A stretch of 63,855 nt of DNA, filler included, from Octopus bimaculoides (Eukaryota): NCBI RefSeq assembly GCF_001194135.2. It is 9 parts of 8 records of this genome, joined end to end, with 100 filler letters (N's around TTAATTAATTAA, not from the genome) between each part and the next. Parts side by side here need not be neighbours in the genome. Positions count along the whole stretch, not along the records: positions 32,137 to 52,435 come from NC_068983.1; 8 more parts are not named here. One strand, written 5' to 3'. Numbering within the stretch: the stretch's first letter is position 1; every line of letters begins with the position of its first letter. This document shows, piece by piece, positions 31,678 to 50,652 of the stretch. The translations under genes were made by a program, and so were the position numbers. Below the pieces are notes generated by a model. The model saw only the letters and a list, made by a program, of their open reading frames with translations, was not told the DNA's origin and did no database searches.

Positions 31678-32369
31678 TAGGTTTGAATGTGTGTGTGTGT
31701 ATGCGCGTATATGTATATACATGGGTGTGTTACCCTTACAGGATCCGAATATATAAGACGCCACATCAAAACGACGTCACACTGACCCGCAATATCGGTC
31801 AAACGTCACCAGATATAGCTAAGGAAGACGCGGATGATGTAACTGCTGTGTGTGATATCAGTAAGATAGGCCGTGTCAATGACACTACAGTTGATAGTCA
31901 AGATAAAGGGGCAGGCGCAGTGTGGGGGTAAAAGCAGAAAGGGACAATATTCTGAAGAATAATAGTGGTGACGTCGCTGTAACAGTTCATTGTGTAAGTG
32001 CTCGGTATATATGTGTATATGTATGCATACATATATNNNNNNNNNNNNNNNNNNNNNNNNNNNNNNNNNNNNNNNNNNNNTTAATTAATTAANNNNNNNN
32101 NNNNNNNNNNNNNNNNNNNNNNNNNNNNNNNNNNNNGACATGAGTGTTTTTGTTTCACTTTTGACACGTAATACTTAAATAGTGGAGGAGATATTATGTT
32201 GCCGTGGGCTCGAACTCTGCAAGAAGTAAAAATTTTTTTTGACTAAAACACAACTGGAACCCTAAGTAAGGCATCTGTAAAATTTGAATGAAATTGGTTG
32301 CGTAGTTCTCGAGTTTTAGGGATTCACACAGACAGACAGACAGACACACATTCTCATTTTTATATATAT

Positions 32370-32404
<35 letters not shown>

Positions 32405-33236
32405 TTACAGTGCCACTCCTACTGTAACCTGCTTATATTACACATTACCTGACATTAAAATGTATTATGACAATTGTGAGTTAAGTGACCTCTGCAAACA
32501 ATATAATACCATCAATGAAATATGAACCAAACTGACTTGGCAGTTTTTCTCAAACTACTCTATCAACAATTTACATTGGTTTATTTTCTATGCATTACTG
32601 GACAAGCACAAGTTGAAAATTCAACTGAAAAAAAAATATTATTCAAGTGTAGGTTTGGATAATCTAGTAACTTATGTAAGATTTAAGACTGACAACAAAG
32701 ACTATAATTGTATTTGCTAATACAATCTCAGATATGTGAGCAATGCTCCCAATATGGGTTTTATTTGATAAGAACAAAATCAGTTACAGATAAATCATAG
32801 CCAGGTTAATATGTTTCAAGCATGTTTCCCACAGATATGAATTCTGATATACATGAGTCAACATGGTAGCCTTCTACTTGGTCACTCAATCTGCTAAAAG
32901 TAGCAGCCAAATCTCCCCCAAATCACACCCAACCACCTTCTGTAAGGACAGAACACATTAAGTAATTTAGTTCTACACACACTGTAAAAGATAGGATGGT
33001 CATGGCTACACAAACTTCAATTATAGTTTGACCTGAGGCTAAACAACAATATCTGATATGATTTTCATCTGACCAAATGGCAAATAGTTGAAAAAAGATA
33101 AAAGAAAGTGATGTAATAATATTAGGGAGATGAAAGACATGTCGTATCTGACAAGGATTCCTTGTGCTTCAATCCATTTGGAAACACTGTTTCATGAGGC
33201 TTATTATTTATGCTTGTATACCTACTAGGCATGAAA

Positions 33237-33570
33237 GCGCATGGCTTAGTGGTTAGAGTGTTGAGCTCATAATGATGAGGTAGCGAGTTCGATTCCCAGA
33301 CTGGGCTGTGTTGTGTTCTTGAGCAAGACACTTTATTTCAGGTTGCTCCAGTTCACCCAGCTGTAGAAATGAGTTGTGATGTCACTGGTGCCAAGTTGTA
33401 TTGGCCTTTGCCTTTCCCTTGGATATCATCAATGGCATGAAGAGGGGAGACTGGTATGCACGGGCGACTCTAGTTTTCCATAAACAGCCTTGCCTGGACT
33501 TGTGCTTTAGAAGGGAACTTTCTAGGGGCAATCCCATGGTCATTCATGACTGAAAGGGGTCTTTACTTTT
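33237..33570 (+). mobile_element. tRNA-headed SINE, third family (V-SINE-like core)
   Basis: A box TGGCTTAGTGG, B box GAGTTCGATTCC, then TGTGTTCTTGAGCAAGACACTTTA...TGCTCCAGTTCACCCAGCTGTA. Confidence 0.6.
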
Positions 33571-33775
33571 TACTTTTATACCTACTGGGTAGTTCTTATG
33601 CTAGCTTCTCTTCCTCCCTACTTCTCAACAACATAACTGGAAGGTATTAAGAAATAATCTGTGCTCTGTACAGTGTGAAATGTAGTAAACCTGAATCGAC
33701 AAAACAAAGACAGGTGCCACCTGAGCCTATTTAGGTAATGAGTCAACAAAATAATAACTTGACATAAACACTTAC

Positions 33776-33902
33776 CATCTTTGCCTGCCATGTATTTAAC
33801 ATCAGAAATGAAAATGTTCGGGAAACCATCATCGAAGCTGCCCCAGTTAATGGTTTTGCGTAACTGAACTTGCCGTTTGATACGTCTAGGTCTTTTAGCT
33901 GC
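33776..33902 (-). CDS. Internal exon of a class II ribose-phosphate pyrophosphokinase (PRS3/PRS4-like PRPP synthetase)
   Basis: Acceptor CTATTTATTCTTAG| and donor G|GTAAGT; 127 nt, open: AAKRPRRIKRQVQLRKTINWGSFDDGFPNIFISDVKYMAGKD. INW..F.DGFPN.FI matches the N-terminal motif I recall from plant PRS4 (INWRxFxDGFPNLFI...RGQHVAF), which differs from the class I FSNGE/FADGE motif. Confidence 0.8.
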
Positions 33903-34414
33903 CTAAGAATAAATAGAATGCTTTAAGTCAATGAATATGCATGGGCTGTAAGGGAGAATGAAGAAGAGGGGAAAATATACTAAAACAGAGAGAGGAAGAT
34001 GGCAAGAGCAGAAAAATTGTTTCCTTTTAATCAAGACAAAGTCATTCTTTGTGTGCAGCTACAGCAAAGTCAACTGGTTCTCCGAGACAGCCTCTTGAGC
34101 TAAAGAAGAAGACTCTAGGATGTATTTAAACCTTCAAGAAATAGCAACTAAATCTCCTTAAATCACTCCTGTGATCCTAGATGCACTATGCCTGAAAGAA
34201 AAATGAAATGGTCACAGCTGGGATGCCTTTAAATATGTCTACTTAAACAATGAAATACCAATTTGAATCTAGTGAGACTTCAACAAACTGAGAATCTACA
34301 GGAATAAAATGAAATACTATAGGGCATTTTGCAAATGTTAAAAAACAGACATGGCTTTACTATGTGTGTTTCTTAACTCTACTGGCCTAGAGCCTATAAG
34401 AGACAGAAATACTG

Positions 34415-34469
<55 letters not shown>

Positions 34470-34499
34470 TGCGTGTGTTTGCATGCATTACCTGTATCA

Positions 34500-34985
34500 C
34501 CTATACAGGCCAGACTGTTGGATATGAGCAATGGTCACAATTCACCTCCATCTTCGTCCAAATCAATTAACTAATCATCTTCCTATCATTGTGGAGTCCT
34601 TCTGAGTCGTCTTCTCTAAACTTTTGGATACTACTTGGCAACTGCATAGGTTCATCTGTTGTCTGCAAACCTTGCAATGTATCTGGCCCATGTCTAGAAA
34701 TGGTCATCAGAGACACTGACAGGGCAGGTGATGTGAACATCAACTGCAAACTGCTAATACACTACCAATTCACAGATGACACTATCCTCAACACCTAAAT
34801 CACAGATCAGCTACAGACAATGCTGACAGAACTGGACACTCATAGCTTGGCAGTGAGCCTTAAAACGAACCACATGAAAACAAAATATTTGCAGTCTGAA
34901 GACATAGTACAAGGTTGAATAGATATGGGTAGCAATAAAATCAGGATGGTAAAAGAGTACATCTAATTGGGGCACACAGTGAATA
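34500..34985 (+). pseudogene. Decayed RTE-clade reverse transcriptase
   Basis: CLEMVIRDTDRAGDVNINCKLLIHYQFTDDTIL...QLQTMLTELDTHSLAVSLKTNHMKTKY...VKEYI*LGHTV aligns with RTE GININGxxLxHLRFADDIVL...GLKMNxxKTK...EYxYLG. Contains stops. Confidence 0.8.
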
Positions 34986-35489
34986 TGCCCCGAGACATGG
35001 ATGCTAAAATTTTTTACTGAATAAATTTTAGTGTATCCTTTTCCTGTAAAATTCTATGGTCAAACATACAATGAAATTTATTTTGTAAAACTACTGTTTT
35101 AGGTAAGCTTTTCAGTAAAATGTGATTCTCTTTTTTTCTGGAAGTGAAAAACTGAGTATTTTTACAGTAAAAGCCTTAAACTTCTCAAATCTTTGCCAAC
35201 TGGGAAAATTTGCAAAATGAATTCAAATTATCAAATAAATTCTGAAAGTGACAAGCAGGTAGAATTATTAGCATTATGGACAAATTGCTTAATAACATTT
35301 CTTCTGGTTCGAGCTTATCAAAGGATGAAATTGCCTTTCATTTTTTCAGGGTTTATAAAATAAAGCATCAGTCACATACTGGGATCAATGTAATCAACTT
35401 AACCCTTCCCTCAAAATTGCTGGCTTTATACTAAAATTATAATTATTGAAAAATTCTGCAAGAATCTAGTTCTTTTCTGATGAAAGTTT

Positions 35490-36200
35490 TACTTTTTTAT
35501 TTTTCTCATATCAACCAGTTATCTTGAAGTTCATCCATTGATAGCCATCACACTTCTTATGCAGTAAAAGTTTACTTAGTCAAGCGTGGATGTGTAAATA
35601 AACAGTTATTCAGTGCATGACTTTTAATGATGTTCATAATTTTAACTGTATCTTATATTACTGTACTTAGCTCAGAAGAATTTGTTTTACTCATCAATAC
35701 ATCTCAATGAATCTTGCAATGAATGAATATCATCAGTATATCACTTGTGGATTTAACCTTTGTAGGAAATCTTACATTTTAACCTTATCTGCTACTAAGT
35801 AATTGAAGCATATACCAACAGTTATCCCATTCCAGATTTACTTCCTTTAAAAGCTGGTCCAATTAGCAGACAACATTCTTCTGTTGTATGTCCATCTTAT
35901 GATTAACAAAACTGAGATGTTGTGCACATTTTTCATCTAAATATCTAACAGACAACAATAGTTGAACCACAACTGTAATTCATTCAATTTGTCCAACAGA
36001 ATGACAGTTTAATACTCCTTTTAATTATTGCAATAAGTTTAACAAACTGGTTATTGATAATTTCTGAAATTCTCTTACATATCGTAACATACAGTTATTA
36101 AGTACAAAACTTCTCTGATGACTTCAACCCAACAAGATGACTAGTTCTGACAGTGTTCCCTCATCATTCACTCAAACAGTGCACTCCCAAGGTACACTTG
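35490..36200 (-). pseudogene. Decayed Charlie/Buster-type hAT transposase
   Basis: Fragments QLLLSVRYL...LDQLLKEVNLEWDNC.., NIIKSHALNNCLF and LLLH.EV*WLS match QLLVFVRY..L.W..CVG.CTDGA, VNFIKxRALNSRLF and LLLHTEVRWLS. Frameshifted. Confidence 0.7.
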
Positions 36201-36419
36201 TTCTCTACAATGTCTTTAATCTTTTCTGTATGGAGATCTATTGCAACTAACAGAAACGCAGTATTTACTCCATTATATCAACCACAATACTTAGTCAAGT
36301 ATAGATCTAATTGACCTATGAACTGAATAACCACGTTATTTTTGCAGTTACTTTAGAGTTACCTCCCCTTACACAGTATACCCAACGAATCTTTCATTGA
36401 TGTATTATAGAAAGTTATA

Positions 36420-36900
36420 AAGAGATCGATTGCAAAACGCAATAAGCGCCAAAATAATGATTTTGTAGATGTTGTTATCAATCTATTGTCCGTGGAAGCG
36501 GGAACGTTACTGCATAATTAATTTTTTTGCACTACGAATCATATCTCCAGCTTTTTCGTGTTAAAAAGTAACTTTTATCGCAAAACACAATAAACACCAC
36601 TACTCTTTCGCCGCAAAACGAAATATAATAAATATATCCACCTGGTCAATCAGGGTGCTCGATATGTCCAACATAGCAGGGCCCCTAATTAAGAAGCCGA
36701 TTCTACGGTACGTATACGCGGTGCGACTAGCGCGCGCTTACTACAACAAGTCTGCTTAAACTATACAACGCGTACGTACGTACATACAAGGTATAATTTT
36801 AAGGTGCATGCCTCAGTCACAGTAACTAACGCGTCAGCACAGTCACGTTCGTGTTCGAAAGTTTTAATTTCTTTGGAATCGTGCATGAATTTCCAGGAAA
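36420..36900. promoter_or_regulatory. CpG-island-like segment between two CpG-poor domains
   Basis: Dense CG (TACGTATACGCGGTGCGACTAGCGCGCGC, AACGCGTACGTACG). It could be a promoter or a young TE end. Confidence 0.35.
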
Positions 36901-37025
36901 ATGAATAGTTTTGACGTTACTCAAGCGAATGCGACATTCGGGTTTAGGTACAGTGCCTCAATTGGGCTGCAGACATACCATACTACAAAATGAACATTTG
37001 TGTCATGCTGATCTTCTTTCTCCAG

Positions 37026-37241
37026 CTAATCTATCTTTTAATCATGCCAAATCTTACGAAAAACTAAACAAGGTGATTCGGGATGAGTTTATTTTGAACT
37101 TAGTGGAAACTGGCGGCCGAAAACGACATCGTGGTGAGCAATGGGGAAGACACAGAGGTGTGGATGTAAAGTATTTCATGTTAACAGTGGATCATCCAAG
37201 GAAGATAAAAGTCTGCACGGAGACATTTGTTAAAGTTCTCT
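37026..37241 (+). CDS. Exon-like open segment resembling the N-terminal region of Sola-type transposases
   Basis: Acceptor CTTCTTTCTCCAG| and donor CT|GTAAGT, within ORF 36911-37279. YEKLNKVIRDEFILNLVETGGRKRHR...VKYFML...KIKVCTETFVKVL resembles the Q.AFI...KR.R...KYF...VC...F..L pattern. Family call from memory. Confidence 0.35.
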
Positions 37242-38039
37242 GTAAGTTGACACAGAAATTTCATTATAAATCTCAATGAAGCCTTAATTTGAAAATAATT
37301 CATGGGCAAAACCTACATAATGTTAGTGGCCTTAGGCTTAGTTGTAATCTATTGTAGATCTGAAGTTAGAAATCTAAAATAGATAGATACGTCTAGGATG
37401 TTAGAAATACGATTGATCAACTTGAAACCAGCAGGAAATGACAATAAATTAGTCTATGCTATGATACACGGTATGTGTTGTTCATGTAAGGCAGTGAACG
37501 CACCCAGTCCTAAGCTTATGTATGCGTTTGACATTGTATGGTTGGGGGAGGGGGGTCGTATAGCCGGACACTTAACTTAAGCCTTACATTAATTAAATAA
37601 TTAAACTAGTGTGTACAAACTTGTTGTAATGTACAAGTTTTACCTAAATTTGAACATTTTCTCAAATAATCTGATACTGATACTAGTGATGCAGTCAATA
37701 TTTTCATTAGATTTTTTCTTCTTTTTTTTTTTGGTTTGAATGTGTCTAATTTCTGACAGTCTGACAATACAGCGTGTGATGAATGGCGATGATGATAATG
37801 CATAAGCAGAATATTATATACTCTTAAACTAGTCTAGTAATGATAAATTTTAATGTCAAAATTTCATGAGTATCACTGAAATACGACAACTTTAACACAA
37901 AATAACTTCGAAAATGAAGCATTTTCTTTAAAATGCCAAGAGTAAATGATGTTTTAAATGATACATTCTACCAATATACGAAATTTGAAAGTGTTTAGTT
38001 GCAAAAAATTATTTTTTCTATGTGCCGGCCAAAAGGAAA

Positions 38040-38525
38040 AGATCCTCTTGCAGACCTTCTTGTTTGACTACCTTGAGGATGTTCCCATAATTTGACATAA
38101 AGACTTTTTTCAGTAGGATGGAACTCCAGCACACTTTGCTAATTGCGTGCATAACTACTTAAACCAGACCTTTCCTAACAGATGGATTGGACGCACAGGT
38201 TCCATGGAGAGGCCACCCTGATCCCCAGAGCTTACTTCCCTTGACTATTTCCCCTGGGGACATCTCAAATTTGTTGTGTGCCAGAATTGTTCACGCACTC
38301 TTGATGATTTGAAGGATGCAATAACAATTGAGTGCCAAAAGATCATCCTTTCCACCCTCAGGAGTGTAAAAGACAGCTTCATAAAGAGAATTGATGCATA
38401 TTTTATTGTAGAGGGTGCTCAATTTATGCATTTGTAATGAATAATTTCCATAAAGTGTTTTTGAAATCAATAAAGGTGTATTTTTTTTAAAAACCAGGAT
38501 GGTGCATGACTTCTGGGACACCCTG
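38040..38525 (+). mobile_element. 3' part of a Tc1/mariner (DD37D/DD41D-like) element
   Basis: FFQ*DGTPAHFANCVHNYLNQTFPNRWIGRTGSMERPP*SPELTSLDYFPWGHLK matches WFQQDGAPxH...FPxRWIGR...WPPRSPDLxPLDFFLWGYLK. Ends with GGGACACCCTG|TA. Confidence 0.85.
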
Positions 38526-39911
38526 TATATATATATAAAATTAAAAAAGACAGCAATTTGAAATGTTTTACCAAAAAGGAAAGCTATAATTGTCTCTAAA
38601 TGCAACTAGGGTGTTATAAATACCTACATTGCTAGAAATCAGAGCTAAAATGCTTTAATACTGTAATCAAAGCACATAATTAAGTACATATATACAGGCG
38701 GCGGGACTGTAATCGTCCAAAAACACCATTTGAGAATTTCTTATACTGACTTCAGTTTTGGCAATTTCTGTTGCCTCATCAGTAAGAACTAGGTCTACTT
38801 CAGTGGATACTGGACTTGATTCTCTGTCTGTATATATGTTTTCATCATAGAAATCTATGGACGATTAAGCGATTCATGAAATCATCCAGAGATTTCTATG
38901 ATGAAAACATTCCTAATGTGCTACATAGTAGGACTGAACCTAGAACTGTGGTTAAGAGAAATTTTCGATCACACAGCCATACTTGTATACCCATGTCCTT
39001 GTTTCCAAACTAATGTTCTAAAGCTGTGAACATGCTCAACAATTTCCATACATCAAGTTTAGCTTTCTGACAGTCTGTCTTCAATGGACGTTCACTCCAT
39101 TACTATCCTTTTTATCATGATAAGAATATTTTCTTCAGACACAGACTGCAGTGCTTATAGTATGGATGGCATTAAACTGTTGTTGACCTTAATGTTTGTA
39201 GCAGACTCACATTGTAGTAGCACCACTGATACAATTATTATTTGAAATTTTGTTAGTTATTTCAATATACTTAGGATGATTATATTAAGTTAAACCATTA
39301 ATGTTGAGCCTACATAGAAGCTTGTACGTGATTGCTCAGTCTGCTAGAAATAGCAACCAAATTGCCTTCAAACACCTTATCTTCCTTAAAAAAAAAGACA
39401 CATCAGTCAAGTTTGGAACACTTTTAATCATAGATCTGCTATATCAGGGTTGACCTGAAAGTAAATAACTACAGCCACTGACCACATTACTGTCTAAAGC
39501 ATTCCTTCTCAAGGGGATATCTAGTTAGGTTAAAGAGCCTTTATACACAGTATGCTTACTACATCATCTTGCATCTTATAGACCTCAGAGTTAGCAGAGT
39601 AGTGGATGGGACTGACTTATTTGACACTACTTGCTGTTGAGCTGTAAAGTTTTTTTAAATTTTTTTTTTCAAAAGATTAAGAAAACTCACATTTAAAAAA
39701 ATTATTTCTTTTTCCCACTCAGAAAACAATAATTTTTGTAATGTCTTTGATGTTTTTATACTCACATTTGCATTTCTTTCCCATTATCATTAGCAGAGAT
39801 TTGCATGAAATATGTAAATATAAATATTAAATACAGTTCTATATTTAAGAGGTGAGGAATTATGTACATTATTTACATTCAATGGATATTTGTCCTCATC
39901 TTGTTTGTTGT

Positions 39912-39950
39912 TAACACGTTTCGGCTGATATACCCTCCAGCCTTCTTCAG
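39912..39950 (-). ncRNA. Hammerhead-ribozyme-like core in the Penelope pseudo-LTR
   Basis: Minus strand CUGAAGA-A-GGCUG-GAGGGUAUAU-CAGCC-GAAAC-GU-GUU: CUGANGA and GAAA boxes plus a 5-bp stem II. I could not form stem I. Confidence 0.45.
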
Positions 39951-40456
39951 ATGTCTTGGGAAAATTTTGAACCTGAGTTCTCATTCCTAAGGTATTTTTC
40001 AATGTTATTATTATTATCATTATTATTATTGTTATTGTTCGAGTCACTGCTTGGAATTGAGTAAAACCACCAATAGAAGAGAATATGACCAAAGACTGTG
40101 GGTACTCCATCCCATGCAGCTGTGGTAGGTTATACAAAGGCGAAACATGTTGCCCCCTCAAAATAAGGGTAGACAAACACCGCAAAGCTGTAACACGAGG
40201 AGATATTGATAAATCGGGTATAGCTGATCATGTATGGAAAAATGGAAACCACCTTCCCCTGTGGGATGAAGTTAAAATAATACAGAGAACACCACTGGAA
40301 AATATGAAAACTAAAAGAGGCAGCACATATGCTAGGACACAACAACCTCCTAAGCAGACCGAGTGCAGATGTGAACAGCATATGGGAATCGGTATTAAGG
40401 AAGGATAGGAAAATATTAGATTTATAAGCCCTAAAATTCACTCCATAATTGCCCAT

Positions 40457-40519
40457 GGGCATATGGTGTAGTGGTTAAGAGTGCAGGCTACTAACCCCAA
40501 GATTCTGAGTTCAATTCCA
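40457..40519 (+). other. tRNA-like Pol III promoter cassette (not an intact tRNA)
   Basis: GGGCATATGGTGTAGTGGTTAAGAGTGCAGGCTACTAACCCCAAGATTCTGAGTTCAATTCCA: A box TGGTGTAGTGG, B box GAGTTCAATTCC. The CTACTAA loop resembles tRNA-Ser CTGCTAA. Confidence 0.65.
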
Positions 40520-43189
40520 ATAATAATAATAATAATAATAACATCAAAAAATACCTGGAAGGTATATCAGCTGAAACGTGTTAACAACAAACAAGATGAG
40601 GACAAATAACCGTCGAATGTAAATAATCTCATCGTGCTGTTTAGAAAATGATAATGTAAATAATATAAATATTAAATGTTACTTACTAAAGATGATGTTA
40701 TTCCACACAATGAGGTTCCTTGTGTATCATTTTGTGAAGTGTCATTCGTTATTTCATGGCCTCTGCATTCCTAATAACAATAATTGATTTTAGCAGCAGT
40801 AGAAGAATAGGCTCAAAGAATAAAAAAATGTTTGAAAAACAGGACTGTTCATTCAAATGTAGAATATGCAATGATATAGATAAGACTAAAACTCACATTA
40901 TTTCAAAATGCTTACAGTTGACTTAAATACAAAAGTGTAGGCAATAATTAATTAGAGCTTTTGCAATAGGCCTGGCTTTACATGCACAGAAAAGAGCTAT
41001 AATAATTTTGTGGGTACAGAAATTAAAGTCTTCAAAAACAATTAAGTGAGGCTGTCATGAGACTTTCCTATAAAAAATGAATGGAGAACAGACTACAAGC
41101 GAGATAATGTAGTTGCTGATAAGAAGCTGAAAGTGTTCTTGTTTCCTTTAGTCTCCTTGTTATGCAGGTTCCTTCTACTTAGATCACTTTGCATTTCTTT
41201 ACCTAATGGTCATCTTCTACAAATGTTGGTTTCCAATATATCTGATATCGTTGTTGGTAATATCAATGTTATAGGTGTTGTAGAAGATTCTGCTTGAGTT
41301 GAGATATTACCAACAGGTTTCCACACAGTTTCTACCTAACCAGCTTTCCTTACAAAGCCGTGGTTGCTCCTAGACTATGGTAGCAGTCACTTACTCTAGG
41401 CATTGTGCAGTGACATCAACACCAAAACTGTGTAATAGCAAAGTTAACTTTTTACCTACACAACAATTCTTGCTATCATTTTTGACAAAGGAATGATTAT
41501 CATACCTTCTACTCTATAGTTCTGACATCTATCTTACAGAATTTTAAAATATCTTACAATTCTTAGCTCAGGTTCTGCAGCAATATTTTTATTTTCATAA
41601 ACTCTCAATCCAAACAATAGTAGTAAAGTATAGTTATATACTAAGGTTGATGCTCAACCTGGTGCCAAGTTAGAAGAAATTGATATCACAACTTCAAGTT
41701 CATGAACATGTGCATGCAAATACTTAAGTGCTTAGGTGTGTGTACATACATCTGCAGGCATATATCTGTTTATACTGAAGCTTTTCCATGATAATAATTT
41801 TTTAACTAGACCAGGAACACATAAATCCTAAAATAATTGAACCAGTGAATTACTATTTTTGTAAAATGTAGACGAGTCTATTCCCAATATCAATACAGTA
41901 TATTTTATATAGTGTAGAAATTCATGATGAATTGAATGTATCTAAACTGATTTCTCTTTTTTTTTTTTACAGAATTTTAAATATCAGCATTATTCTTTGT
42001 GTAGCTCATACAAATGGTTCTATCTTTTTTTAGTGCAAAAATATCAGTAAACTTCATCTCCAAAGAATTAAGCAAATAAATTAAAAATACAAAACAAGAG
42101 ATATATGCTGATACACAGTTACATGAAGCAAAAACTAATGTCTTGGGCTATGACCTTCATCAGAAGAAATTTTTTCTCTATTAGCACACCAAGAATACAC
42201 TATCATTACCATACCAACTGTAAAGTGACTACCCTTCTAAACAAGTGGAGCTAAATGTCTAGCAGAGGGACAAGAGGTCTTGCCTACAGTAGGAAAATAC
42301 AAGTGTACTGAGTCTGATAACTTAAACCACCTGAATATTTTGATGATTGATTCTTTGTCCCTATCAGAGATGCAGCAGTGATAAATGTAGTATAGTGGTT
42401 GTAGTGATATTGGAAGTAGAAATGGCAGAGATAGCTGTAGTAATGGTGAAATAGCAAGTGGCAATATGGTAATGGTAACTGCAGCAAGAATATTGAAGGT
42501 GAAGATGGAAATATTTAGTGATAGCAGCAGCAACAGCTACACCAATAATTACATATTCAAAGCTACAATTTCTTCAAGAAATATTTCTGAACCAATAACT
42601 TACCCACCACACACATACACAGAATACTTGACATTGCCCAAGATGAAAAGTAGCTATAAATGCCCCAGAATTGTTCTTAAGGAAGGTTTTTTTTTTACCC
42701 ATGTAATAGAACACACTGTTAGGTATCTCTTAAAACAGTTACCAGCTATGTGAAAAATGAAATTGTTTTCCTCTCCATGTATTAGTCTGGTGTCTATTGC
42801 ACTTTAACACAGATTCATATTCAATATGAATGGTACATTTCATACATGACCTTTAGGTAATTCAATCATATTAAATAAGAATACAGTTTTATCTGAAAGT
42901 AAAAACAGTTTTATTTCATTTGAAATCATTACTCAACACAATATTTTATCTTTTATTCTAGAAAATTTTTATCTTCTATTCTTAAAATAATTTGAAAAAT
43001 GAATAGAAACAGGAGTGCTTGGAGAGGGAGATGAACCACCCACGAGAATAAAATCATTCTTAGAATATGTAGAAGCTGGAGAATCCAGAGGAAACCTACA
43101 CAGTCAAATATTTGAACTGCAATATATGCAATGATAAATAATAATGTTAGGAATTGTGATGAGTCCCAGGTTATATTAGATCTACACCT

Positions 43190-44460
43190 ATCAATTGTGA
43201 ATATTTTTGTTTTAACCATCAGAGGCATAAATAACGGATTTTGGAGGTTTCCTAACTACTGAATATTCTATATATGACTGGCCATGAAAAATGCAGGATT
43301 TCTCAAGGTGCAGTCCAGCAACTGTTAATGTTGTGACCTTGAGATTTATTGATTGACATGGCAAAATTTAGATTTACTGGGAGCTGAAGCCTTCTAAATG
43401 AAAGGGACACATCTACTGGTATGAATGGAATACTAAATATAACTATATCTTCTGCTTTGGTGCACCTAGTGAGAACAATACTTTCAATGACGTGCAGTAC
43501 AAAATTATTAACCATCAGTCATGTGCCATTGCATAATCACAACTTAAATAACTTTCACATTATTGGAGATCCTTTTTGGCTTTTTTTTTTTTTGCTGAAG
43601 TGTGTGTAGCAATAAACTTGAAGGTTCCAAGAAATTTCAAAATTCTATTGGAGAGTGAAATCTTCCTGATCCACATTATCCATTGATTTCCTGGAAGTGC
43701 CTACAACAGTTGCCAGTTAATGCTGTTAACTGGAATACTTTAGGTAAAAATATAAATCTTTCGCACAATCACACGTGTCAGATAATGATGTTGCAAGGTT
43801 AGAGAACACCTTCAATATTAATTCATTTGTGTATTAACCATTGTGTTCATAGGAGCAAAGTCAATTGTGTCAGCATTGTCAAAAGGAAACCTTCGTAATA
43901 AGCTTTGGGCAAACTGACTGGACAGCTTATCTCCAGAAAGATTGAACTTCATGTTTGCAGAAAGTTTGAAGACTTCAACTTTGGTCCTAAGTGATGGCAA
44001 TTTAAGATAAACTTGAATTTTAATGGTATTTGTTCCTTTCAGAACCACTGGCAAAGTCTGGTGGAAGTCACTTAACAATACCACTGTTACTCACCCCCAT
44101 TTAAGATCTACTGGCACACAAGTCGGCAAAGTCCTGTGCAGGGCCTCCAGTGCTATTTTGTGTTCTAATGTGCAGTCATCTTAGGCAATCATTTCTTAAG
44201 AACTTGCCCAGTTCACAAACTCTTTATTATGATCAAGGGCAAATTATAAGATCTATTAAAGGGATAAGAAGGTATAAAAGAGAAGATTTATTATTATTGC
44301 TAGATATTATTAATTTATTAATATTTATGTTAGCAAAGGAAATGCTTGAAAGCAGGACATACAGTCAAGTTTCTGGGAAGGAGTGGTGATGGCAATATCT
44401 GTAAAAGTAGCTGCTATGGCTACACCTTTACATTTATGGTAAACGTGTCGGAGGTGGTGG
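43190..44460 (-). pseudogene. Decayed Helitron RepHel, PIF1-helicase region
   Basis: VLLSDFHQTLPVV (LAGDFRQTLPVI), LSANMK..LSGD...QFAQSLL, VIESIVLTRCTKAEDI..IPFIPVD..FRRLQLPVNLNFAMSINKSQG (FKRLQFPVRLAFAMSINKSQG). Stops and frameshifts; the remnant may extend to ~44860. Confidence 0.85.
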
Positions 44461-45146
44461 GGAGAGATTGGTTTTGATGCAGGTGGTTGAATGAACTATC
44501 TCAAATCATGATATGATAGAAGTTTCTGCAAGAGATAGATTTTGAAGAATTTCATTTAACCTGTGGTAATTGTAAATGATATCAGTCTTCACTATTGCCA
44601 TAAAGAGTTATATCGCAGCATATCGTAGGAACTATATATTTCATTTATATTTGAAAGTGTTGTTTTTATACGTCAGAATGATGTTGCTTTTGTGATGTGA
44701 TTCTCCACTCATGACGACAGCAACCTCCATTGCACTCTGGCGTATTGAAACGGTGTGCATATTTTCTAGAGAGTCTCTTGTTCTCATGAACAATTTGAAA
44801 CTCCAGCATGAGCTCAGAGCATAAAACTTGTCAGAGCTGATCTTTGCTTGATACATCGATTTCTATCTATCCTACGCTTTCTATCTACTATTCTTTCAGT
44901 TTCTCTTTTATCTTGTTCTTTCTTTTTTGTTCACATATTCATAATTTCTTGCACTTGGATTAGATACTGTGCACTCACATTTGCAAAACCATTTGCATCT
45001 TTCTGTCATCTAGCAACTGCATTTATATTTAAAATAACGTCTTCCGTTCCTCTTAAACTTTTAATTGTATAGTGAATTGCTAATAAAATTATATTTCGTC
45101 ATAACTAATTTCAAATGACAACCACAAAATTTGACTTTCCCCTTAA

Positions 45147-45365
45147 CCCTTTAGTATTCAAATCGGCCATGCCAGGCCCAAATATTCTACCTGTTTTATG
45201 TTCCAACTGGCCAGGCCAAGCCTCCCACACCAATCCTACCAAGTCATTCTAAAAATAAACAATTACATCAGTGAAATCTCAAAGCTACAAGATAATGTAT
45301 GATAAATTTTAAATAATTCAAGTATATAAGCATTACAATTGTGATGTAGTCTGAATGCTAAAGAG
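45147..45365. mobile_element. piggyBac-type MITE
   Basis: TTAA|CCCTTTAGTATTCA ... TGAATGCTAAAGAG|TTAA. Confidence 0.75.
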
Positions 45366-46102
45366 TTAAATTAATTTCACAAGGAGTAGTAAGCAGACGT
45401 CGGATTTAAGAAGCACCAACAAGTTGAATTTTCTTCGTTTTGAAGGGGATTTTTCAGATTTTTTTTCACAGTGCCCTTGGAAATGCTTTGGACTATCTTC
45501 TTCGCAAAAAAAAAAAAATTACGAAAAATGATGCCCCCCACCCCCCACTCCGACCGATTTTGTGGACCTACGTACGACGATTATTTTGGGCACTACGCAC
45601 TTAAAAACTACAGAAGCATTTTCGGTTAAAAAAAAGCAAATATTTTCAGACGAAAAGGTGTGTCGTTATGTCTTATCTAATGTTGTCACATACAACTATC
45701 ACGCACACAATCCCAGTTTTCAAATTCAATTTTCTGATTGGGTAAAAATAATCAATCTTTAAATCTCTGTAACATTTTTCTAGAATTTTTCTGGAACAAG
45801 TGAATAATAAAATCAGAGTGAGTGTAAAAAATTACATCAATATACAAGGTTTGACAAGTTTCACTTAATTTTAAAATTTCGAAACCTATGGGTGAAACAG
45901 AAAAGATCCATAGAAAGAGAGGTGGGGGGGGGGAGAAGGAAACAAAAAGGATTTGATAGTAGTGAAGTGGTGATTATATATCAAAGTGAAAGGAGTAATT
46001 ATAGGGATAGTAAGAGAGTTGTTTGTGTGAGTTTCCTGTACAAGCGTACATTGTATAGGAACCAAGCATGTTCGAAGAATTACTTTATTTTCATTTTCAC
46101 AT

Positions 46103-46795
46103 TTGATTCTAGCTAGTTCAACACTAAAAAGAAAAAAAAATTTCACGAACAACGAAAGACAAATTTTAAAAAACATAATCTTAACAACTAATATTATAAA
46201 TGTTGTGTCTGGGGAGTGCCATTCTCTTTCAGTGCCTTATAATTTAACACACTCACCGAAAAGGTTGCAAAACGCAACGAAAATTTTAGAAAAATAAAAA
46301 AGAAATAAGTGGAAATTTTATCGGTGAGTGTGTTAAATTATAAGGCACTAAAAGAGAATAACTGTCCTCGGACAACAGAATATACTTCAACACACGAACT
46401 CACATAAAGAAACTTGCAAACCAAATCCCAAAACGAAATAATATTATAAATATTACTGATGACCAATACAACAAATTTAAACTTTACATGCCTTTTGTCA
46501 TTATACTGCTTGGCTATGTTTTGTTTTATGAGCTAGAAAGTGAAACTGATGAACTCAGCAGCGATCATAATTTGATGGAAACTCGTTCGTGAAACGCTTT
46601 CTGAAACACAAAACGAAGCAAAGCGGATAAACTGTAATGAACCAATGCATTTCATGAATTGCAGCACGTTTCGATGGAAAACTTGCATAAGATTCTTCCT
46701 TATTTTAGTTTCACATCCCATTGCCTCGCCTTATATTGGTGGGCAGCAGTTGACTGCAAACAATACGTTGTTATAGAATAGGTCATTGTCGCTAG
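46103..46795. pseudogene. Possible PIF/Harbinger remnant (Myb/SANT-like start on +, transposase N-terminus on -)
   Basis: + strand KRKKNFTNNERQILKNII resembles a Myb/SANT-like start. - strand SDNDLF...ETKIRKNLMQV...LQFMKCIGSLQ...VSESVSR loosely resembles HARBI1-type T.R....QV..AL.FY.SGSFQ....ISQ.S.SR. Weak similarity. Confidence 0.3.
46221..46359. repeat. 39-bp inverted repeat (1 mismatch) with a 61-nt spacer
   Basis: ATTCTCTTTCAGTGCCTTATAATTTAACACACTCACCGA (46221-46259) versus TCGGTGAGTGTGTTAAATTATAAGGCACTAAAAGAGAAT (46321-46359). Confidence 0.9.
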
Positions 46796-49114
46796 CAGGG
46801 TTTGTAAAAAATTAATTGAAATACATTGGTCCAATTAATTGATTGGAGTCGTACTGCCAGTTAAATAATTGATTGCTATCATATCAATTAATTGCAGTTA
46901 ATTGCAACATTGTCAGTGAAAGTTTTTCAAATGGCTCACTTCATTCAGCGTTCAATTGGCAAATACAACGTTCTATTATTATTTGAGGTATTGTGTTGAC
47001 GCTTTGTTCTGACTGCTGAGAATGATTGATATATTCTGTCGTGTTTGAGAATTGGCTATTGTGTATGTGGTCAAATAATCACTGTCGAGTGATTCTTGGT
47101 TCTGACTGCTGAAAATGATTCACACATTCTGTCTTCAAGTTATTATATCGTAACTTCGCCTGCTCCAATATATTAACTGTATAAGACTTTCATCAGTGGA
47201 GTGGCGAAATATCTTCTATTTTAAACTAACCCATGCCATGTGGAGACTAGCAAATCATCAGAAGATATTTTAACCAAACAGACAGTGAACATGTATGGAA
47301 ATGGAAGTGTGGGAAAAGGTTGATCCAAAAAAAAAGGAACTGGACAGATAAATCTTATGAATCATATAAGAAACCAGCATCCAGAGTATTCTACTACTCA
47401 CCAAGAAGTAGTTTGCTCAGTCGTTCGGCCTTAAATGTTTATGGTTGGATTGAGTAGGTATGTATTGGATCAAAACCTTTTTTTTTTTTTTTTACTGAAG
47501 ACCCTCTGACTCGCAAGTACACAAGCTTGAGAGGTATGACAAATGTGACTTTAAAGAAATACTCAAGAAGTGGAAAAGAACTGATGAACTTCCAAGTAAA
47601 TTTTCATTGGTAATTGACTGCTGGACTAAGGATTCGACGCATTTCAATGAACTTTTTGCATCTTATTCGTGCAATTATTAAAATGACTATTGAACTGTTT
47701 TGCTGGCATTTTCGCCAATGGTAAGTGAAATATCATTCATTGCTTCTAATTATGTCGAATTTATAGAGTATGTGTTAAGTGTCTATAACAAAAATTTAGA
47801 AAATGTAGCTATTACCGGAGATAATACTGGAGTGAACAAATCTATAGCGAATTTCTGTAGAATAACGTTGATTGTTATTCATTCTAGCTGTTTCTGCTTA
47901 TCTCGACAAACAGGAAGTTCTGCTTGATAAAATTAATATGTTGATGGGCAAGCTAAAATCATTAAAACTTGCGGGTAAACCAGGAAAAAACGCCTTTGCA
48001 ACCTCTACAAATAAATAAAAACCCGTTGGTCCAGTACTTATGACATGATTGAGAGGTACATCCAACTCAAGCCGTTTTTCTACTTTTTTCAAGACGATCC
48101 AAAGCTGGTTGATTATCTGTTGCCTCCATGCAATCATAAATGATCTGCAGACTCAAAAAGACAATTTAGGAATGTTACGCTCAGTAACAGTCGCCTTGCA
48201 AAGAACAGAAATAAATTTGGGAGATGTTCGAATTCTTTTTGACGAAATTCTCACATTGTATGGTTATGAGGAATTTTAAAAATATTTGGCTCGATCGGCA
48301 GTCATTGTGCACAGCCCAAATTTGGAAAGTGGAGTTGTGAAAATTTTACAACATGCAGAAGCAGAGCTAACTGCGGATGAAGTAGCTGCTCTACATCAGC
48401 AGAAAGTGGTGACAGACACGTCACAACAGTCTAATTTATCTGTAGTTGATGATTTTGCTTCAATTTGTTTGAAAAAACACGAAAAAGATAAAATTTCACC
48501 TCAGCAATATCTGAACTGTAGATACGTTTTGGGTAAATTTGGGTGTACTTCCCAAAATTTACCAATTGTTGTTACCAACGCCCAACATCTTGGAACATTT
48601 CTTCAGCTCAGCAGGTTACATTTTTAATGGTTTACGGCAATACTCAACACCAATGAATTTAGAAATGCAATTATTTCTAAAAGTCAATCGCGCTTTCTTG
48701 GATGAAGAACTAGTTTCAGAAGTCTGCAATCGTTCATGACCTTTTGCTATATTAGAACATTTTAATTGTACTCCTCCTTTGAGAAACTCTTTCAAGTAAA
48801 GACTTCCAATTTATTTGTTTCTCAACTTATGTACAATCTAGAGTATACACGTTGTTTGTTCCCTATTCTAAATCAATAAAATTGAACTTTGAACGTTTTC
48901 TGATAATAAAGTTTTTTGAAACTATAAGACGTGCCTTTTATTTTCCTATCATTTTGGCTCTTATCTAAATCGAAGCTAACACTCCAAAACAAATGATGTT
49001 TTTACAGTTGGTAAAGTAATTGACAATTAATTGGCCTGTATCCCTATTAAAATTTATTGATTGCTAGAAAAATAATTGATTGGAAAAGTTCCAATCAGTT
49101 ATTTACAACCCTTG
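46796..49114 (+). mobile_element. Full-length, non-functional hAT DNA transposon
   Basis: 8-bp TSD GTCGCTAG (46788-46795) / ATCGCTAG (49115-49122). Imperfect TIRs CAGGGTTTGTAAAAAATTAATTG / CAATCAGTTATTTACAACCCTTG. Repeated subterminal AATTAATTG/AATTGATTG motifs at both ends. Confidence 0.85.
47250..48739 (+). pseudogene. hAT transposase pseudogene
   Basis: BED-finger-like W.KCGK...NLMNHIRNQHPEY, VYGWIE*VC, VIDCWT (first D), LAFSP...TGDNTGVN, RWSSTYDMIERY, and C-terminal PTPNILEHFFSSAG..F..LR....PMNLEMQLFLKVNR. Multiple stops and frameshifts. Confidence 0.85.
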
Positions 49115-49463
49115 ATCGCTAGAACAGCAATAGTTAAATAGTATTTCAGCGATGTATGTATTTTGTGAAATATCGACTACTCTGTACAGATTGACGAAAA
49201 CAGCTTAGACAATTTGTAAAATATCTTCGGCAGTAATAAGTTGTCTAATTCTTACACTTTATTAAGCAAATCAAAATGAAATACATCTAAAGCATTTCAC
49301 AATATAAAGACAAACAAAAAACTAAACTAATTTTACAATAACTATCATATTATATCAGGTTCGTATCATTTTCTTTTCAAATTTTTTCACTTTCCCTCCA
49401 TCTGCGAATTCAGGAGTTTTGCTTTCCGAATCATGAAACAAAATACCGCTAAACTCAATATTA

Positions 49464-50652
49464 AAAGTTCCTGAGGAAAAGCTTAATTTGTGATTTCAAA
49501 AGGATTATATTTTCCTCCAAAGTTACGAGGGAAAAACTCGGATCCTGTGAATCTTGTGAATTTTCCGAAGTCCCCCACCTTTTTTTTATTGCTTTCAGAT
49601 TCGTTTCCTACGTGGGTGTAAAGTAGAAAGATATCCATTTTGGCAAGACTTCCTTTTGTACCCACCAAAAAACACCCCTTTTTTATTTTTGATTTTTTTT
49701 CTACACAANNNNNNNNNNNNNNNNNNNNNNNNNNNNNNNNNNNNNNNNNNNNNNNNNNNNNNNNNNNNNNNNNNNNNNNNNNNNNNNNNNNNNNNNNNNN
49801 NNNNNNNNNNNNNNNNNNNNNNNNNNNNNNNNNNNNNNNNNNNNNNNNNNNNNNNNNNNNNNNNNNNNNNNNNNNNNNNNNNNNNNNNNNNNNNNNNNNN
49901 NNNNNNNNNNNNNNNNNNNNNNNNNNNNNNNNNNNNNNNNNNNNNNNNNNNNNNNNNNNNNNNNNNNNNNNNNNNNNNNNNNNNNNNNNNNNNNNNNNNN
50001 NNNNNNNNNNNNNNNNNNNNNNNNNNNNNNNNNNNNNNNNNNNNNNNNNNNNNNNNNNNNNNNNNNNNNNNNNNNNNNNNNNNNNNNNNNNNNNNNNNNN
50101 NNNNNNNNNNNNNNNNNNNNNNNNNNNNNNNNNNNNNNNNNNNNNNNNNNNNNNNNNNNNNNNNNNNNNNNNNNNNNNNNNNNNNNNNNNNNNNNNNNNN
50201 NNNNNNNNNNNNNNNNNNNNNNNNNNNNNNNNNNNNNNNNNNNNNNNNNNNNNNNNNNNNNNNNNNNNNNNNNNNNNNNNNNNNNNNNNNNNNNNNNNNN
50301 NNNNNNNNNNNNNNNNNNNNNNNNNNNNNNNNNNNNNNNNNNNNNNNNNNNNNNNNNNNNNNNNNNNNNNNNNNNNNNNNNNNNNNNNNNNNNNNNNNNN
50401 NNNNNNNNNNNNNNNNNNNNNNNNNNNNNNNNNNNNNNNNNNNNNNNNNNNNNNNNNNNNNNNNNNNNNNNNNNNNNNNNNNNNNNNNNNNNNNNNNNNN
50501 NNNNNNNNNNNNNNNNNNNNNNNNNNNNNNNNNNNNNNNNNNNNNAAAGTTCCTGAGGAAAAGCTTAATTTGTGATTTCAAAAGGATTATATTTTCCTCC
50601 AAAGTTACGAGGGAAAAACTCGGATCCTGTGAATCTTGTGAATTTTCCGAAA
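49464..50652. repeat. ~105-bp direct duplication flanking an N gap (49464-49569 and 50546-50650)
   Basis: AAAGTTCCTGAGGAAAAGCTTAATTTGTG...GGATCCTGTGAATCTTGTGAATTTTCCGAA is identical on both sides, then the copies diverge. Confidence 0.8.

What the first reader, a model, noticed from the sequence alone, without database searches (positions are those of the whole stretch)
33776..33902. Spliced exon of a 'plant-type' class II PRPP synthetase in a cephalopod-like genome
Seen: a 127-nt open exon with canonical acceptor and donor, encoding ...LRKTINWGSFDDGFPNIFISDVKYMAGKD. Established: plant PRS3/PRS4 (class II) carry this motif. They are phosphate-independent, lack allosteric ADP inhibition and accept several NTP donors, and are often described as plant-specific, whereas vertebrates use class I PRPS1/2. 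Inference: this animal keeps an intron-containing class II enzyme and so may have a differently regulated route to PRPP. I recall similar annotations in other invertebrates, so patchy retention is more likely than recent transfer, and it may not be new.
Basis: partly seen in the sequence, partly recalled or inferred. Interest (0 to 1): 0.7.

Follow-up and report, generated by a model that had tools for sequence, protein, structure and literature searches.

The report
Known octopus class II PRPP-synthase exon
This is a real, correctly spliced exon of an already annotated Octopus bimaculoides gene for a "class II" PRPP synthase, an enzyme type once called plant-specific but now published as present in most animals except vertebrates, so it is genuine but ordinary.

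Summary
On the minus strand, 33902..33776 is a 127-nt exon with an AG acceptor and a G|GTAAGT donor. It encodes AAKRPRRIKRQVQLRKTINWGSFDDGFPNIFISDVKYMAGKD.

The piece is 100% identical to Octopus bimaculoides chromosome CM046603.1. The peptide matches 42/42 residues of the RefSeq model XP_014781861.1 (LOC106877469, formerly "ribose-phosphate pyrophosphokinase 4-like"), where it is coding exon 3 of 9. Transcript contigs from two related cephalopods leave the genome exactly at both splice sites.

The full protein scores 316 bits (51% identity) against spinach PRS4 and 374 bits against the assayed amphioxus class II enzyme. It scores only 85 bits (26%) against E. coli class I Prs. It carries both published class II marks. 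The FLAG-region Glu is replaced by Phe109, inside this exon. The RF-loop Arg is replaced by Thr (TGTMER), outside the piece.

A 2025 paper already reports class II PRPS in most metazoans except Craniata, and a 2026 preprint shows the amphioxus enzyme is active.

Phosphate independence and broad NTP use are inferred for octopus, not tested. Verdict: already known, low interest. One minor extra is an Octopus-specific, alternatively spliced 84-nt cassette exon at 40770..40687.

The parts
33776..33902 (-). Coding exon 3 (127 nt, phase 0 in, phase 1 out) of O. bimaculoides LOC106877469. It encodes residues 83-124 of XP_014781861.1 plus the first base of Val125.
   Evidence: Searches give sequence and translation. 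The match to P0027 is 42/42. It maps to L001 34038-34164 at 100%. Transcript contigs share both boundaries.
33903..33920 (-). 3' splice site of intron 2: polypyrimidine tract ttctatttattcttAG, with the AG at 33904-33903.
   Evidence: Transcripts L002 and L003 diverge from the genome upstream of 33902.
33770..33775 (-). 5' splice site of intron 3: GTAAGT after the exon-final G. The G joins TN of exon 4 to make Val125.
   Evidence: Sixteen short genomic gene calls from other animals read through the same site as 'GKD|G...'.
33816..33836 (-). Codons for F105-D-D-G-F109-P-N111, the 'FLAG region' of the N-terminal domain. Phe109 occupies the position of the adenine-N6-contacting Glu39 of class I enzymes.
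   Evidence: Alignments to a PDB class I chain and to E. coli Prs pair FSDGE(39) with FDDGF. The diagnostic is described in PMC13252144.
33873..33896 (-). Codons for K85-R-P-R-R-I-K-R92, a basic patch that looks like a nuclear localisation signal. It sits in the variable linker before the conserved core.
   Evidence: The patch is basic in cephalopods (GRRKRR in P0001, HRTKRE in Argonauta) but absent in amphioxus, plants and bacteria. Any function is inference only.
40687..40770 (-). Coding exon 2 (84 nt, phase 0-0, 28 aa: ECRGHEITNDTSQNDTQGTSLCGITSSL). Acceptor ttattAG at 40772-40771, donor GTAAGT at 40686-40681. It is an Octopus-specific cassette exon.
   Evidence: tblastn of P0027 and the sequence itself. 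It is skipped in O. sinensis isoform X2 and absent in Argonauta and decapodiforms. A shorter version is present in transcript L002.
33903..40686 (-). Intron 2 (6784 nt), with repeats and decayed mobile-element-like ORFs.
   Evidence: Exon map, repeats.
40771..52435 (-). 3' part of intron 1. Exon 1 (MESEKGKIGSQTVLPPVLLYAHPSMEMLAKKIVS...) lies about 5.3 kb beyond the piece's edge.
   Evidence: Exon 1 maps to L001 10001-10162, which corresponds to window positions 57939-57778, outside the piece. There is no tblastn hit to residues 1-54 inside the piece.
32137..33775 (-). 5' part of intron 3 (about 11.6 kb in all). Exon 4 (VIFLGSFHSPEIIFEQ...) lies outside the piece.
   Evidence: Exon 4 maps to L001 at about 45766-45843. 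No exon-4-like frame occurs in 32137-33775.

Best explanation
The feature is coding exon 3 of the nuclear Octopus bimaculoides gene LOC106877469 (XP_014781861.1). This is a vertically inherited metazoan class II ribose-phosphate diphosphokinase (PRPP synthase), which makes PRPP from ribose 5-phosphate and a nucleoside triphosphate.

The exon encodes the end of a lineage-variable N-terminal linker (AAKRPRRIKRQVQL). It then encodes the first conserved core element, the 'FLAG region' strand-loop (TINWGSFDDGFPNIFISDVKYMAGKD). In class I enzymes this element reaches across the dimer to contact the adenine of ATP.

In octopus, the adenine-contacting Glu is replaced by Phe109. The partner Arg of the regulatory flexible loop is replaced by Thr in TGTMER. 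These are the class II signature.

By inference from plant class II enzymes, the protein should not need phosphate for activity. It should also lack allosteric ADP/GDP inhibition and be less strict about the diphosphoryl donor. It would act alongside the animal's class I PRPS.

Shown here: gene identity, splice sites, class assignment by sequence, and retention of the core residues that class II shares with class I. Inferred: the enzymatic and regulatory properties in octopus.
For: - Genome identity: the piece is 100% identical to chromosome CM046603.1.
- Protein identity: 42/42 match to XP_014781861.1. Orthologues in O. sinensis and O. vulgaris are named 'ribose-phosphate pyrophosphokinase 4'.
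- Gene structure: 9 coding exons over 54 kb.
- Splicing: related-species transcript contigs use exactly these splice sites.
- Family size: 1954 homologues at E<=1e-20. The named best hits are cephalopods, then other molluscs and other invertebrates.
- Class assignment by score: 316 bits/51% to spinach KPRS4_SPIOL; 374 bits/51% to the assayed amphioxus CAH1247366.1; 85 bits/26% to E. coli Prs; at most 75 bits to any solved PRPS structure.
- NCBIfam: all the specific ribose-phosphate diphosphokinase models (equivalogs and narrower subfamilies) score far below their cut-offs. The general model TIGR01251 scores 104.6 against a cut-off of 113.
- Diagnostic residues: FLAG Glu->Phe and RF-loop Arg->Thr match the class II description in PMC13252144.
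- Core residues: invariant with E. coli Prs are H205, K268, R270, D293-D294 and the GGT of the TGGT loop (residues 299-301).
- Literature: class II is present in most metazoans except Craniata, with conserved holozoan splice junctions (PMC12238573). Recombinant amphioxus class II PRPS makes PRPP (PMC13252144).
Against: - No same-species RNA-seq was available, so transcript support comes from related cephalopods.
- No octopus enzyme has been assayed.
- Only two of the nine coding exons lie in the piece. The RF-loop and catalytic-residue checks therefore rest on the public gene model, not on the window.
- The 42-aa peptile alone gave nothing against Pfam, against PDB sequences, or in the word-indexed protein search.
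- RefSeq currently labels the O. bimaculoides protein 'uncharacterized protein'.
Confidence: 0.95

Rival explanations
1. The gene encodes a catalytically dead PRPS-like pseudoenzyme or regulatory subunit, analogous to PRPSAP1/2, rather than an active class II synthase.
For: PMC13252144 has a section on recurrent pseudoenzymification of PRPS in eukaryotes. GenBank entries for the amphioxus orthologue are labelled 'PRPSAP1'. The octopus protein carries an unusual N-terminal insertion.
Against: Core residues shared with E. coli Prs are kept: H205, K268, R270, D293-D294 and the GGT of the TGGT loop. The protein is 51% identical to the amphioxus enzyme, which was shown to make PRPP. There are no PRPSAP-type insertions in the RF or CF loops. 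The 'PRPSAP1' label is an automatic name.
Confidence: 0.03
2. The exon comes from contamination or a recent horizontal transfer from a plant, alga or bacterium into the octopus assembly.
For: The family was historically described from plants. Bacterial class II homologues exist, for example in Desulfonema.
Against: The exon sits in a 168-Mb chromosome-scale scaffold, in a 54-kb gene with 9 exons and long repeat-rich introns. Orthologues occur in O. sinensis, O. vulgaris, Argonauta and decapodiforms. It is 73-78% identical to cephalopod proteins but about 50% to plant ones. Cephalopods are monophyletic in the NJ tree at 98%. The phase-1 intron site is shared with many animal genomes.
Confidence: 0.01
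3. It is a divergent class I or class IV PRPS, not class II.
For: All PRPS classes share the fold. Pfam and NCBIfam give only generic PRPS hits.
Against: Class I and class IV keep the FLAG-region Glu, whereas here it is Phe109. Class I keeps the RF-loop Arg, whereas here it is Thr. The bit score to class II anchors is about four times that to class I.
Confidence: 0.01

Closest known systems
Octopus bimaculoides XP_014781861.1 (LOC106877469; UniProt A0A0L8GEC9), with orthologues in O. sinensis (XP_029634381.1, 'ribose-phosphate pyrophosphokinase 4 isoform X1') and O. vulgaris (CAI9720269.1)
   Same: It is the same gene. The exon peptide is 42/42 identical and the DNA is 100% identical to the reference chromosome.
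   Different: Nothing differs. The finding rediscovers an existing annotation. The current RefSeq product name is only 'uncharacterized protein'.
Branchiostoma lanceolatum class II PRPS (CAH1247366.1), the only metazoan class II enzyme assayed (PMC12238573, PMC13252144)
   Same: 51% identity and 374 bits over the whole core. It has the same FxDxFPN FLAG region and the same TGTMER RF loop.
   Different: Amphioxus lacks the roughly 45-residue cephalopod linker, meaning the cassette exon plus the basic KRPRRIKR patch.
Plant class II PRPP synthases: spinach PRS3/PRS4 (KPRS4_SPIOL) and Arabidopsis-type PRS4
   Same: 51% identity and 316 bits. The motif INW.SFDDGFPN.FI is shared almost letter for letter. 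The FLAG Glu and RF Arg are lost in both.
   Different: The plant RF loop reads TGSFER rather than TGTMER. The plant N-terminus is shorter. The plant enzymes' Pi independence and broad NTP use were measured, whereas for octopus they are only inferred.
Class I PRPP synthases (E. coli Prs, B. subtilis Prs, human PRPS1/2)
   Same: Same two-domain PRT-type fold family and the same reaction. Catalytic His, Lys, Arg, the Asp-Asp pair and the TGGT loop are conserved.
   Different: Only 26% identity. Class I has FSDGE(39) and YAR(96)QD, where octopus has FDDGF and TGTMER. Class I is Pi-activated, allosterically inhibited by ADP/GDP and forms filaments (literature).

Membership tests
Class II PRPP synthase (PRS3/PRS4 type) | Overall sequence groups with biochemically defined class II enzymes and not with class I | tested here: met
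   316 bits/51% to spinach KPRS4_SPIOL and 374 bits/51% to assayed amphioxus CAH1247366.1. This compares with 85 bits/26% to E. coli Prs and at most 75 bits to any PDB PRPS. In the NJ tree a long branch separates E. coli Prs from all class II sequences.
Class II PRPP synthase (PRS3/PRS4 type) | Loss of the conserved FLAG-region glutamate (human PRPS1 E39) that contacts adenine N6 | tested here: met
   Encoded in this very exon: FDDGF109PN aligns with FSDGE39 of class I. The criterion comes from PMC13252144.
Class II PRPP synthase (PRS3/PRS4 type) | RF-loop 'T-x-TMER'-type motif, with the class I Arg96 replaced by Thr | tested here: met
   PYFPTGTMER in P0027 aligns with PYFGYARQDR of class I, pairing Thr166 with Arg96. 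The motif lies in exon 5, outside the window, so this rests on the public gene model. The preprint writes 'TTMER', but the assayed amphioxus enzyme also reads TGTMER.
Class II PRPP synthase (PRS3/PRS4 type) | Core catalytic and substrate-binding residues retained, so an enzyme rather than a pseudoenzyme | tested here: met
   H205, K268, R270, D293, D294 and G299-G300-T301 are invariant across class II sequences and E. coli Prs.
Class II PRPP synthase (PRS3/PRS4 type) | Activity and stability independent of inorganic phosphate | not testable with these tools
   Needs an assay of purified enzyme. Known for spinach enzymes only (literature cited).
Class II PRPP synthase (PRS3/PRS4 type) | No allosteric inhibition by ADP/GDP | not testable with these tools
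   Needs enzyme kinetics. PMC12238573 states that class II is devoid of allosteric modulation.
Class II PRPP synthase (PRS3/PRS4 type) | Broad diphosphoryl-donor specificity (ATP, dATP, GTP, CTP, UTP) | not testable with these tools
   Shown for plant enzymes. The amphioxus enzyme was assayed with ATP only.
Metazoan/holozoan class II PRPS orthologue group | Shared intron positions indicating vertical descent | tested here: met
   The phase-1 donor after GKD is read through as 'D|G' in 16 short genomic gene calls from other animals. Full-length and spliced sequences continue 'D|V'. Two cephalopod transcripts use the same junction. PMC12238573 reports conserved holozoan junctions. The other junctions were not compared.
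Class I PRPP synthase | FLAG-region Glu39 and RF-loop Arg96, and a match to class I equivalog models | tested here: not met
   Phe and Thr occupy these positions. All specific NCBIfam ribose-phosphate diphosphokinase models score 55-100 bits against cut-offs of 296-536.
Class IV PRPP synthase (PMC13252144) | Retains the FLAG-region Glu and has an STMER RF-loop motif | tested here: not met
   The FLAG Glu is absent (Phe109) and the RF loop reads TGTMER. No class IV sequence was available for direct comparison, so this rests on the published description.

The most novel reading that the evidence does not exclude
Cephalopods have added a lineage-specific regulatory linker to an otherwise standard class II PRPS. 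One part is an NLS-like basic patch (KRPRRIKR) encoded at the start of this exon. The other is an Octopus-only, alternatively spliced 28-residue Ser/Thr/Asp/Asn/Gln-rich cassette, exon 2 at 40770..40687. Together they could give isoform-dependent localisation, for example nuclear, or isoform-dependent regulation of PRPP synthesis. This has not been described for any PRPS.
Probability: 0.1. Interest if true: 0.35.

Novelty: already known. Interest (0 to 1): 0.08.

Why it matters
It matters little beyond housekeeping. The exon confirms an existing RefSeq model, and the current product name ('uncharacterized protein LOC106877469') could safely be restored to class II ribose-phosphate diphosphokinase.

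The biological point is that non-vertebrate animals keep a feedback-insensitive, phosphate-independent route to PRPP alongside class I PRPS. This was published in 2025 (PMC12238573) and supported biochemically for amphioxus in 2026 (PMC13252144). The only unexplored angle seen here is the cephalopod-specific, alternatively spliced N-terminal linker.

Tried and rejected
- The 42-aa peptide alone gave nothing against Pfam at E<=10, nothing against PDB sequences, and nothing in the word-indexed protein search. Only the exhaustive HMMER scan found relatives.
- I looked by eye and by tblastn for exon 1 and exon 4 inside the piece. Neither is there. A weak 'LYLHISCKSLLMIMGKKC' match at 39823-39770 (E=2.2) is noise, because the true exon 1 maps outside the piece.
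- From memory I guessed that three intronic ORFs are decayed mobile elements. These were a GIY-YIG/Penelope-like ORF at 40085-40408(+), a hAT-like region at 47700-48740(+), and a Helitron/PIF1-like region at 43300-44100(-). Pfam supported only a sub-threshold PIF1 hit for 43818-44084(-) (22.9 bits against a cut-off of 25.9). The rest stay unverified.
- I used a remembered Arabidopsis PRS4 sequence only as a probe, to pull real, named plant proteins out of the database. No conclusion rests on the remembered sequence itself.
- The first tree script timed out. A simpler NJ tree with 100 bootstraps ran. Support is strong for cephalopods (98%) and weak for molluscs (38%) and metazoa (26%). It serves as a consistency check, not a phylogeny.

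Full report
**1. What is in the sequence**

The feature is on the minus strand. Read 5'->3' on that strand, the region is ...cattctatttattcttAG|GCAGCTAAAAGACCTAGACGT...GGCAAAGATG|GTAAGTgtttatg. The exon is 33902..33776, 127 nt.

The acceptor AG is at 33904-33903, behind a pyrimidine tract. The donor is a consensus G|GTAAGT at 33775-33770. Frame 1 gives AAKRPRRIKRQVQLRKTINWGSFDDGFPNIFISDVKYMAGKD plus one spare G; the other frames are uninformative or closed. Only the strand was left unstated.

**2. More than chance**

A 42-codon open stretch flanked by AG and GT is common, so the test is homology. The peptide alone is too short for Pfam, for PDB sequences and for the word-indexed protein search.

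An exhaustive phmmer scan of 1.84 billion representative proteins found 26 hits at E<=1e-3. The best was a 366-aa protein at 6e-11 and 78% identity. The full-length hits continue ...GKD|VIFLGSFHSP.IFEQLS..., and are PRPP-synthase-like.

**3. Whose gene it is**

Searching with the best hit returned 1954 homologues at E<=1e-20. The named best hits are cephalopods, then other molluscs and other invertebrates. Most carry the name 'ribose-phosphate pyrophosphokinase 4(-like)'.

The Octopus bimaculoides protein P0027 contains the window's 42 residues exactly. It is XP_014781861.1, gene LOC106877469. It was formerly 'PREDICTED: ribose-phosphate pyrophosphokinase 4-like' and is now 'uncharacterized protein'.

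Its genomic locus is L001: GCA_001194135.2, chromosome CM046603.1, 168 Mb. It matches the piece at 100% over 17,572 and 1,890 bases on either side of the same N gap. The conversion is L001 position = 67940 - window position.

The CDS has 9 exons over 54 kb. Two lie in the piece:
- Exon 2 is at window 40770..40687. It is 84 nt, phase 0-0, with acceptor ttattAG and donor GTAAGT.
- Exon 3 is the finding.

Exon 1 lies about 5.3 kb beyond the upper edge of the piece. Exons 4-9 lie below the lower edge.

**4. Splicing evidence**

No same-species reads were available. Two assembled transcript contigs from other cephalopods cover the junctions: L002 from SRR3401912 and L003 from SRR29271483.
- L002 matches exon 1, then a shorter version of exon 2, then exon 3 with boundaries exactly at 33902 and 33776, then exons 4-9.
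- In the nucleotide alignment both transcripts follow the genome through ...AAAGATG. They then continue TCATTTTTCTTGGCA and TTATCTTTCTTGGCA (Val-Ile-Phe-Leu-Gly), where the genome has GTAAGTG.

Independently, 16 short gene calls from other animals' genomic contigs read straight through the same site as 'GKD|G...'. Full-length or spliced sequences read 'GKD|V...'. The phase-1 intron position is therefore widely shared.

**5. Which class of PRPP synthase**

I anchored the comparison on real, named proteins.
- Spinach PRS4 (KPRS4_SPIOL, P0214) was retrieved with a remembered Arabidopsis PRS4 sequence used only as a probe.
- Amphioxus CAH1247366.1 (P0152) is the class II enzyme cloned and assayed in PMC12238573 and PMC13252144. 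It was found in the cluster of P0081.
- E. coli Prs was taken from NC_000913.3 as the class I archetype.

| Comparison with the octopus protein | Bits | Identity |
|---|---|---|
| Spinach PRS4 | 316 | 51% |
| Amphioxus class II | 374 | 51% |
| E. coli Prs | 85 | 26% |
| Best of 31 PDB PRPS sequences | 75 | not calculated |

The specific NCBIfam ribose-phosphate diphosphokinase models score far below their cut-offs. The general PRPS model TIGR01251 scores 104.6 against a cut-off of 113.

The 2026 preprint gives two class II diagnostics: loss of the FLAG-region Glu (human E39, which contacts adenine N6), and an RF-loop 'T.TMER' motif in which Arg96 (which contacts adenine N1) is replaced by Thr. 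It says class IV keeps the Glu. Both class II diagnostics are met:
- FDDGF109PN aligns with class I FSDGE39. This lies inside the exon, at window 33836..33816.
- PYFPTGT166MER aligns with PYFGYAR96QDR. This lies in exon 5, outside the piece.

Core residues are invariant with E. coli Prs: H205, K268, R270, D293-D294 and the GGT of the TGGT loop. That argues against a pseudoenzyme.

**6. Origin**

Identity to the decapodiform query falls in taxonomic order:
- Octopus 73%, Argonauta 67%
- other molluscs 57-66%
- nemerteans, annelids and brachiopods 57-59%
- echinoderms, hemichordates and amphioxus 53-58%
- cnidarians and sponges 50-55%

A quick NJ tree puts octopus with the other cephalopods (98% bootstrap) among molluscs. 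A long branch leads to class I. The deeper nodes are weak.

The gene also sits on a chromosome-scale scaffold, has long repeat-rich introns, and shares an intron position with other animals. Taken together, this excludes contamination and recent transfer. It agrees with PMC12238573: class II dates to LECA, is present in most metazoans except Craniata (Aplysia is the listed mollusc), and has conserved holozoan splice junctions.

**7. How it works**

Shown: the exon encodes the end of a variable linker and the FLAG-region strand-loop of the N-terminal domain of a class II PRPP synthase.

Established for the family (literature): class II enzymes make PRPP from ribose 5-phosphate. They are not allosterically regulated, do not co-assemble with class I complexes or form filaments, and in plants accept several NTP donors. 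The amphioxus enzyme is active with ATP.

Inferred for octopus: the same properties. They would give a feedback-insensitive PRPP supply alongside class I PRPS.

**8. Novelty**

There is none at the level of the finding. The gene is annotated in three Octopus species. The metazoan distribution of class II PRPS is published, and a metazoan member has been assayed.

The one thing not described, as far as I could see, is the cephalopod linker:
- a basic KRPRRIKR patch at the start of this exon, and
- a 28-aa cassette exon found only in Octopus. It is included in O. bimaculoides, O. vulgaris and O. sinensis X1. It is skipped in O. sinensis X2. It is absent from Argonauta and decapodiforms, and shorter in the L002 species.

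Whether this linker has a function is speculation.

**9. Verdict**

The feature is already known, and interest is low.

Noticed in passing
window 40687-40770 (-): Coding exon 2 of the same gene: an 84-nt, phase 0-0 cassette encoding ECRGHEITNDTSQNDTQGTSLCGITSSL. It is found only in Octopus species, is skipped in O. sinensis isoform X2, and is 15 nt shorter and diverged in a related octopod transcript. It is fast-evolving, low-complexity and probably disordered.
   Followed up: partly
window 33873-33896 (-): The first part of exon 3 encodes KRPRRIKR, which resembles a classical monopartite nuclear localisation signal. The patch is basic in cephalopods (GRRKRR, HRTKRE) but absent from amphioxus, plant and bacterial class II PRPS.
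   Followed up: no
window 49464-49569 and 50546-50651, flanking the N run 49709-50545: A 106-nt, 100% identical direct repeat whose second copy starts at the first base after the 837-N assembly gap. This looks like unmerged overlapping contig ends or a local duplication in the reference assembly, not biology.
   Followed up: partly
window 39868-39954 / 40541-40627, with ORF 40085-40408 (+): An 87-nt inverted repeat (87% complementary) brackets a 107-aa ORF on the strand opposite the gene (…YSIPCSCGRLYKGETCCPLKIRVDKHRKA…SGIADHVW…). From memory it resembles the GIY-YIG endonuclease domain of Penelope-like retroelements. Pfam gave no supporting hit. It lies about 60 nt downstream of cassette exon 2 in intron 2.
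   Followed up: partly
window 43303-44084 (-): Broken ORFs resembling a PIF1/Helitron-type helicase (…LLSDFHQTLPVV.KG…, …AMSINKSQG…). Pfam PIF1 scores 22.9 bits, just under its cut-off of 25.9. Probably a decayed Helitron or PIF1-like insertion in intron 1.
   Followed up: partly
window 47700-48740 (+): A run of ORFs in shifting frames ending in …LEHFFSSAGYIFNGLRQYSTPMNLEMQLFLKVN…. From memory this resembles the C-terminal dimerisation region of hAT transposases. There was no Pfam hit.
   Followed up: partly
window 34417-34478 and 32361-32402: Simple microsatellites: (GT)31 in intron 2 and (TA)21 in intron 3.
   Followed up: yes
L001 / public annotation: The current RefSeq product name for XP_014781861.1 is 'uncharacterized protein LOC106877469', although the earlier name and the O. 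sinensis and O. vulgaris orthologues are 'ribose-phosphate pyrophosphokinase 4(-like)'. The amphioxus class II entries are mislabelled 'PRPSAP1' in GenBank.
   Followed up: yes
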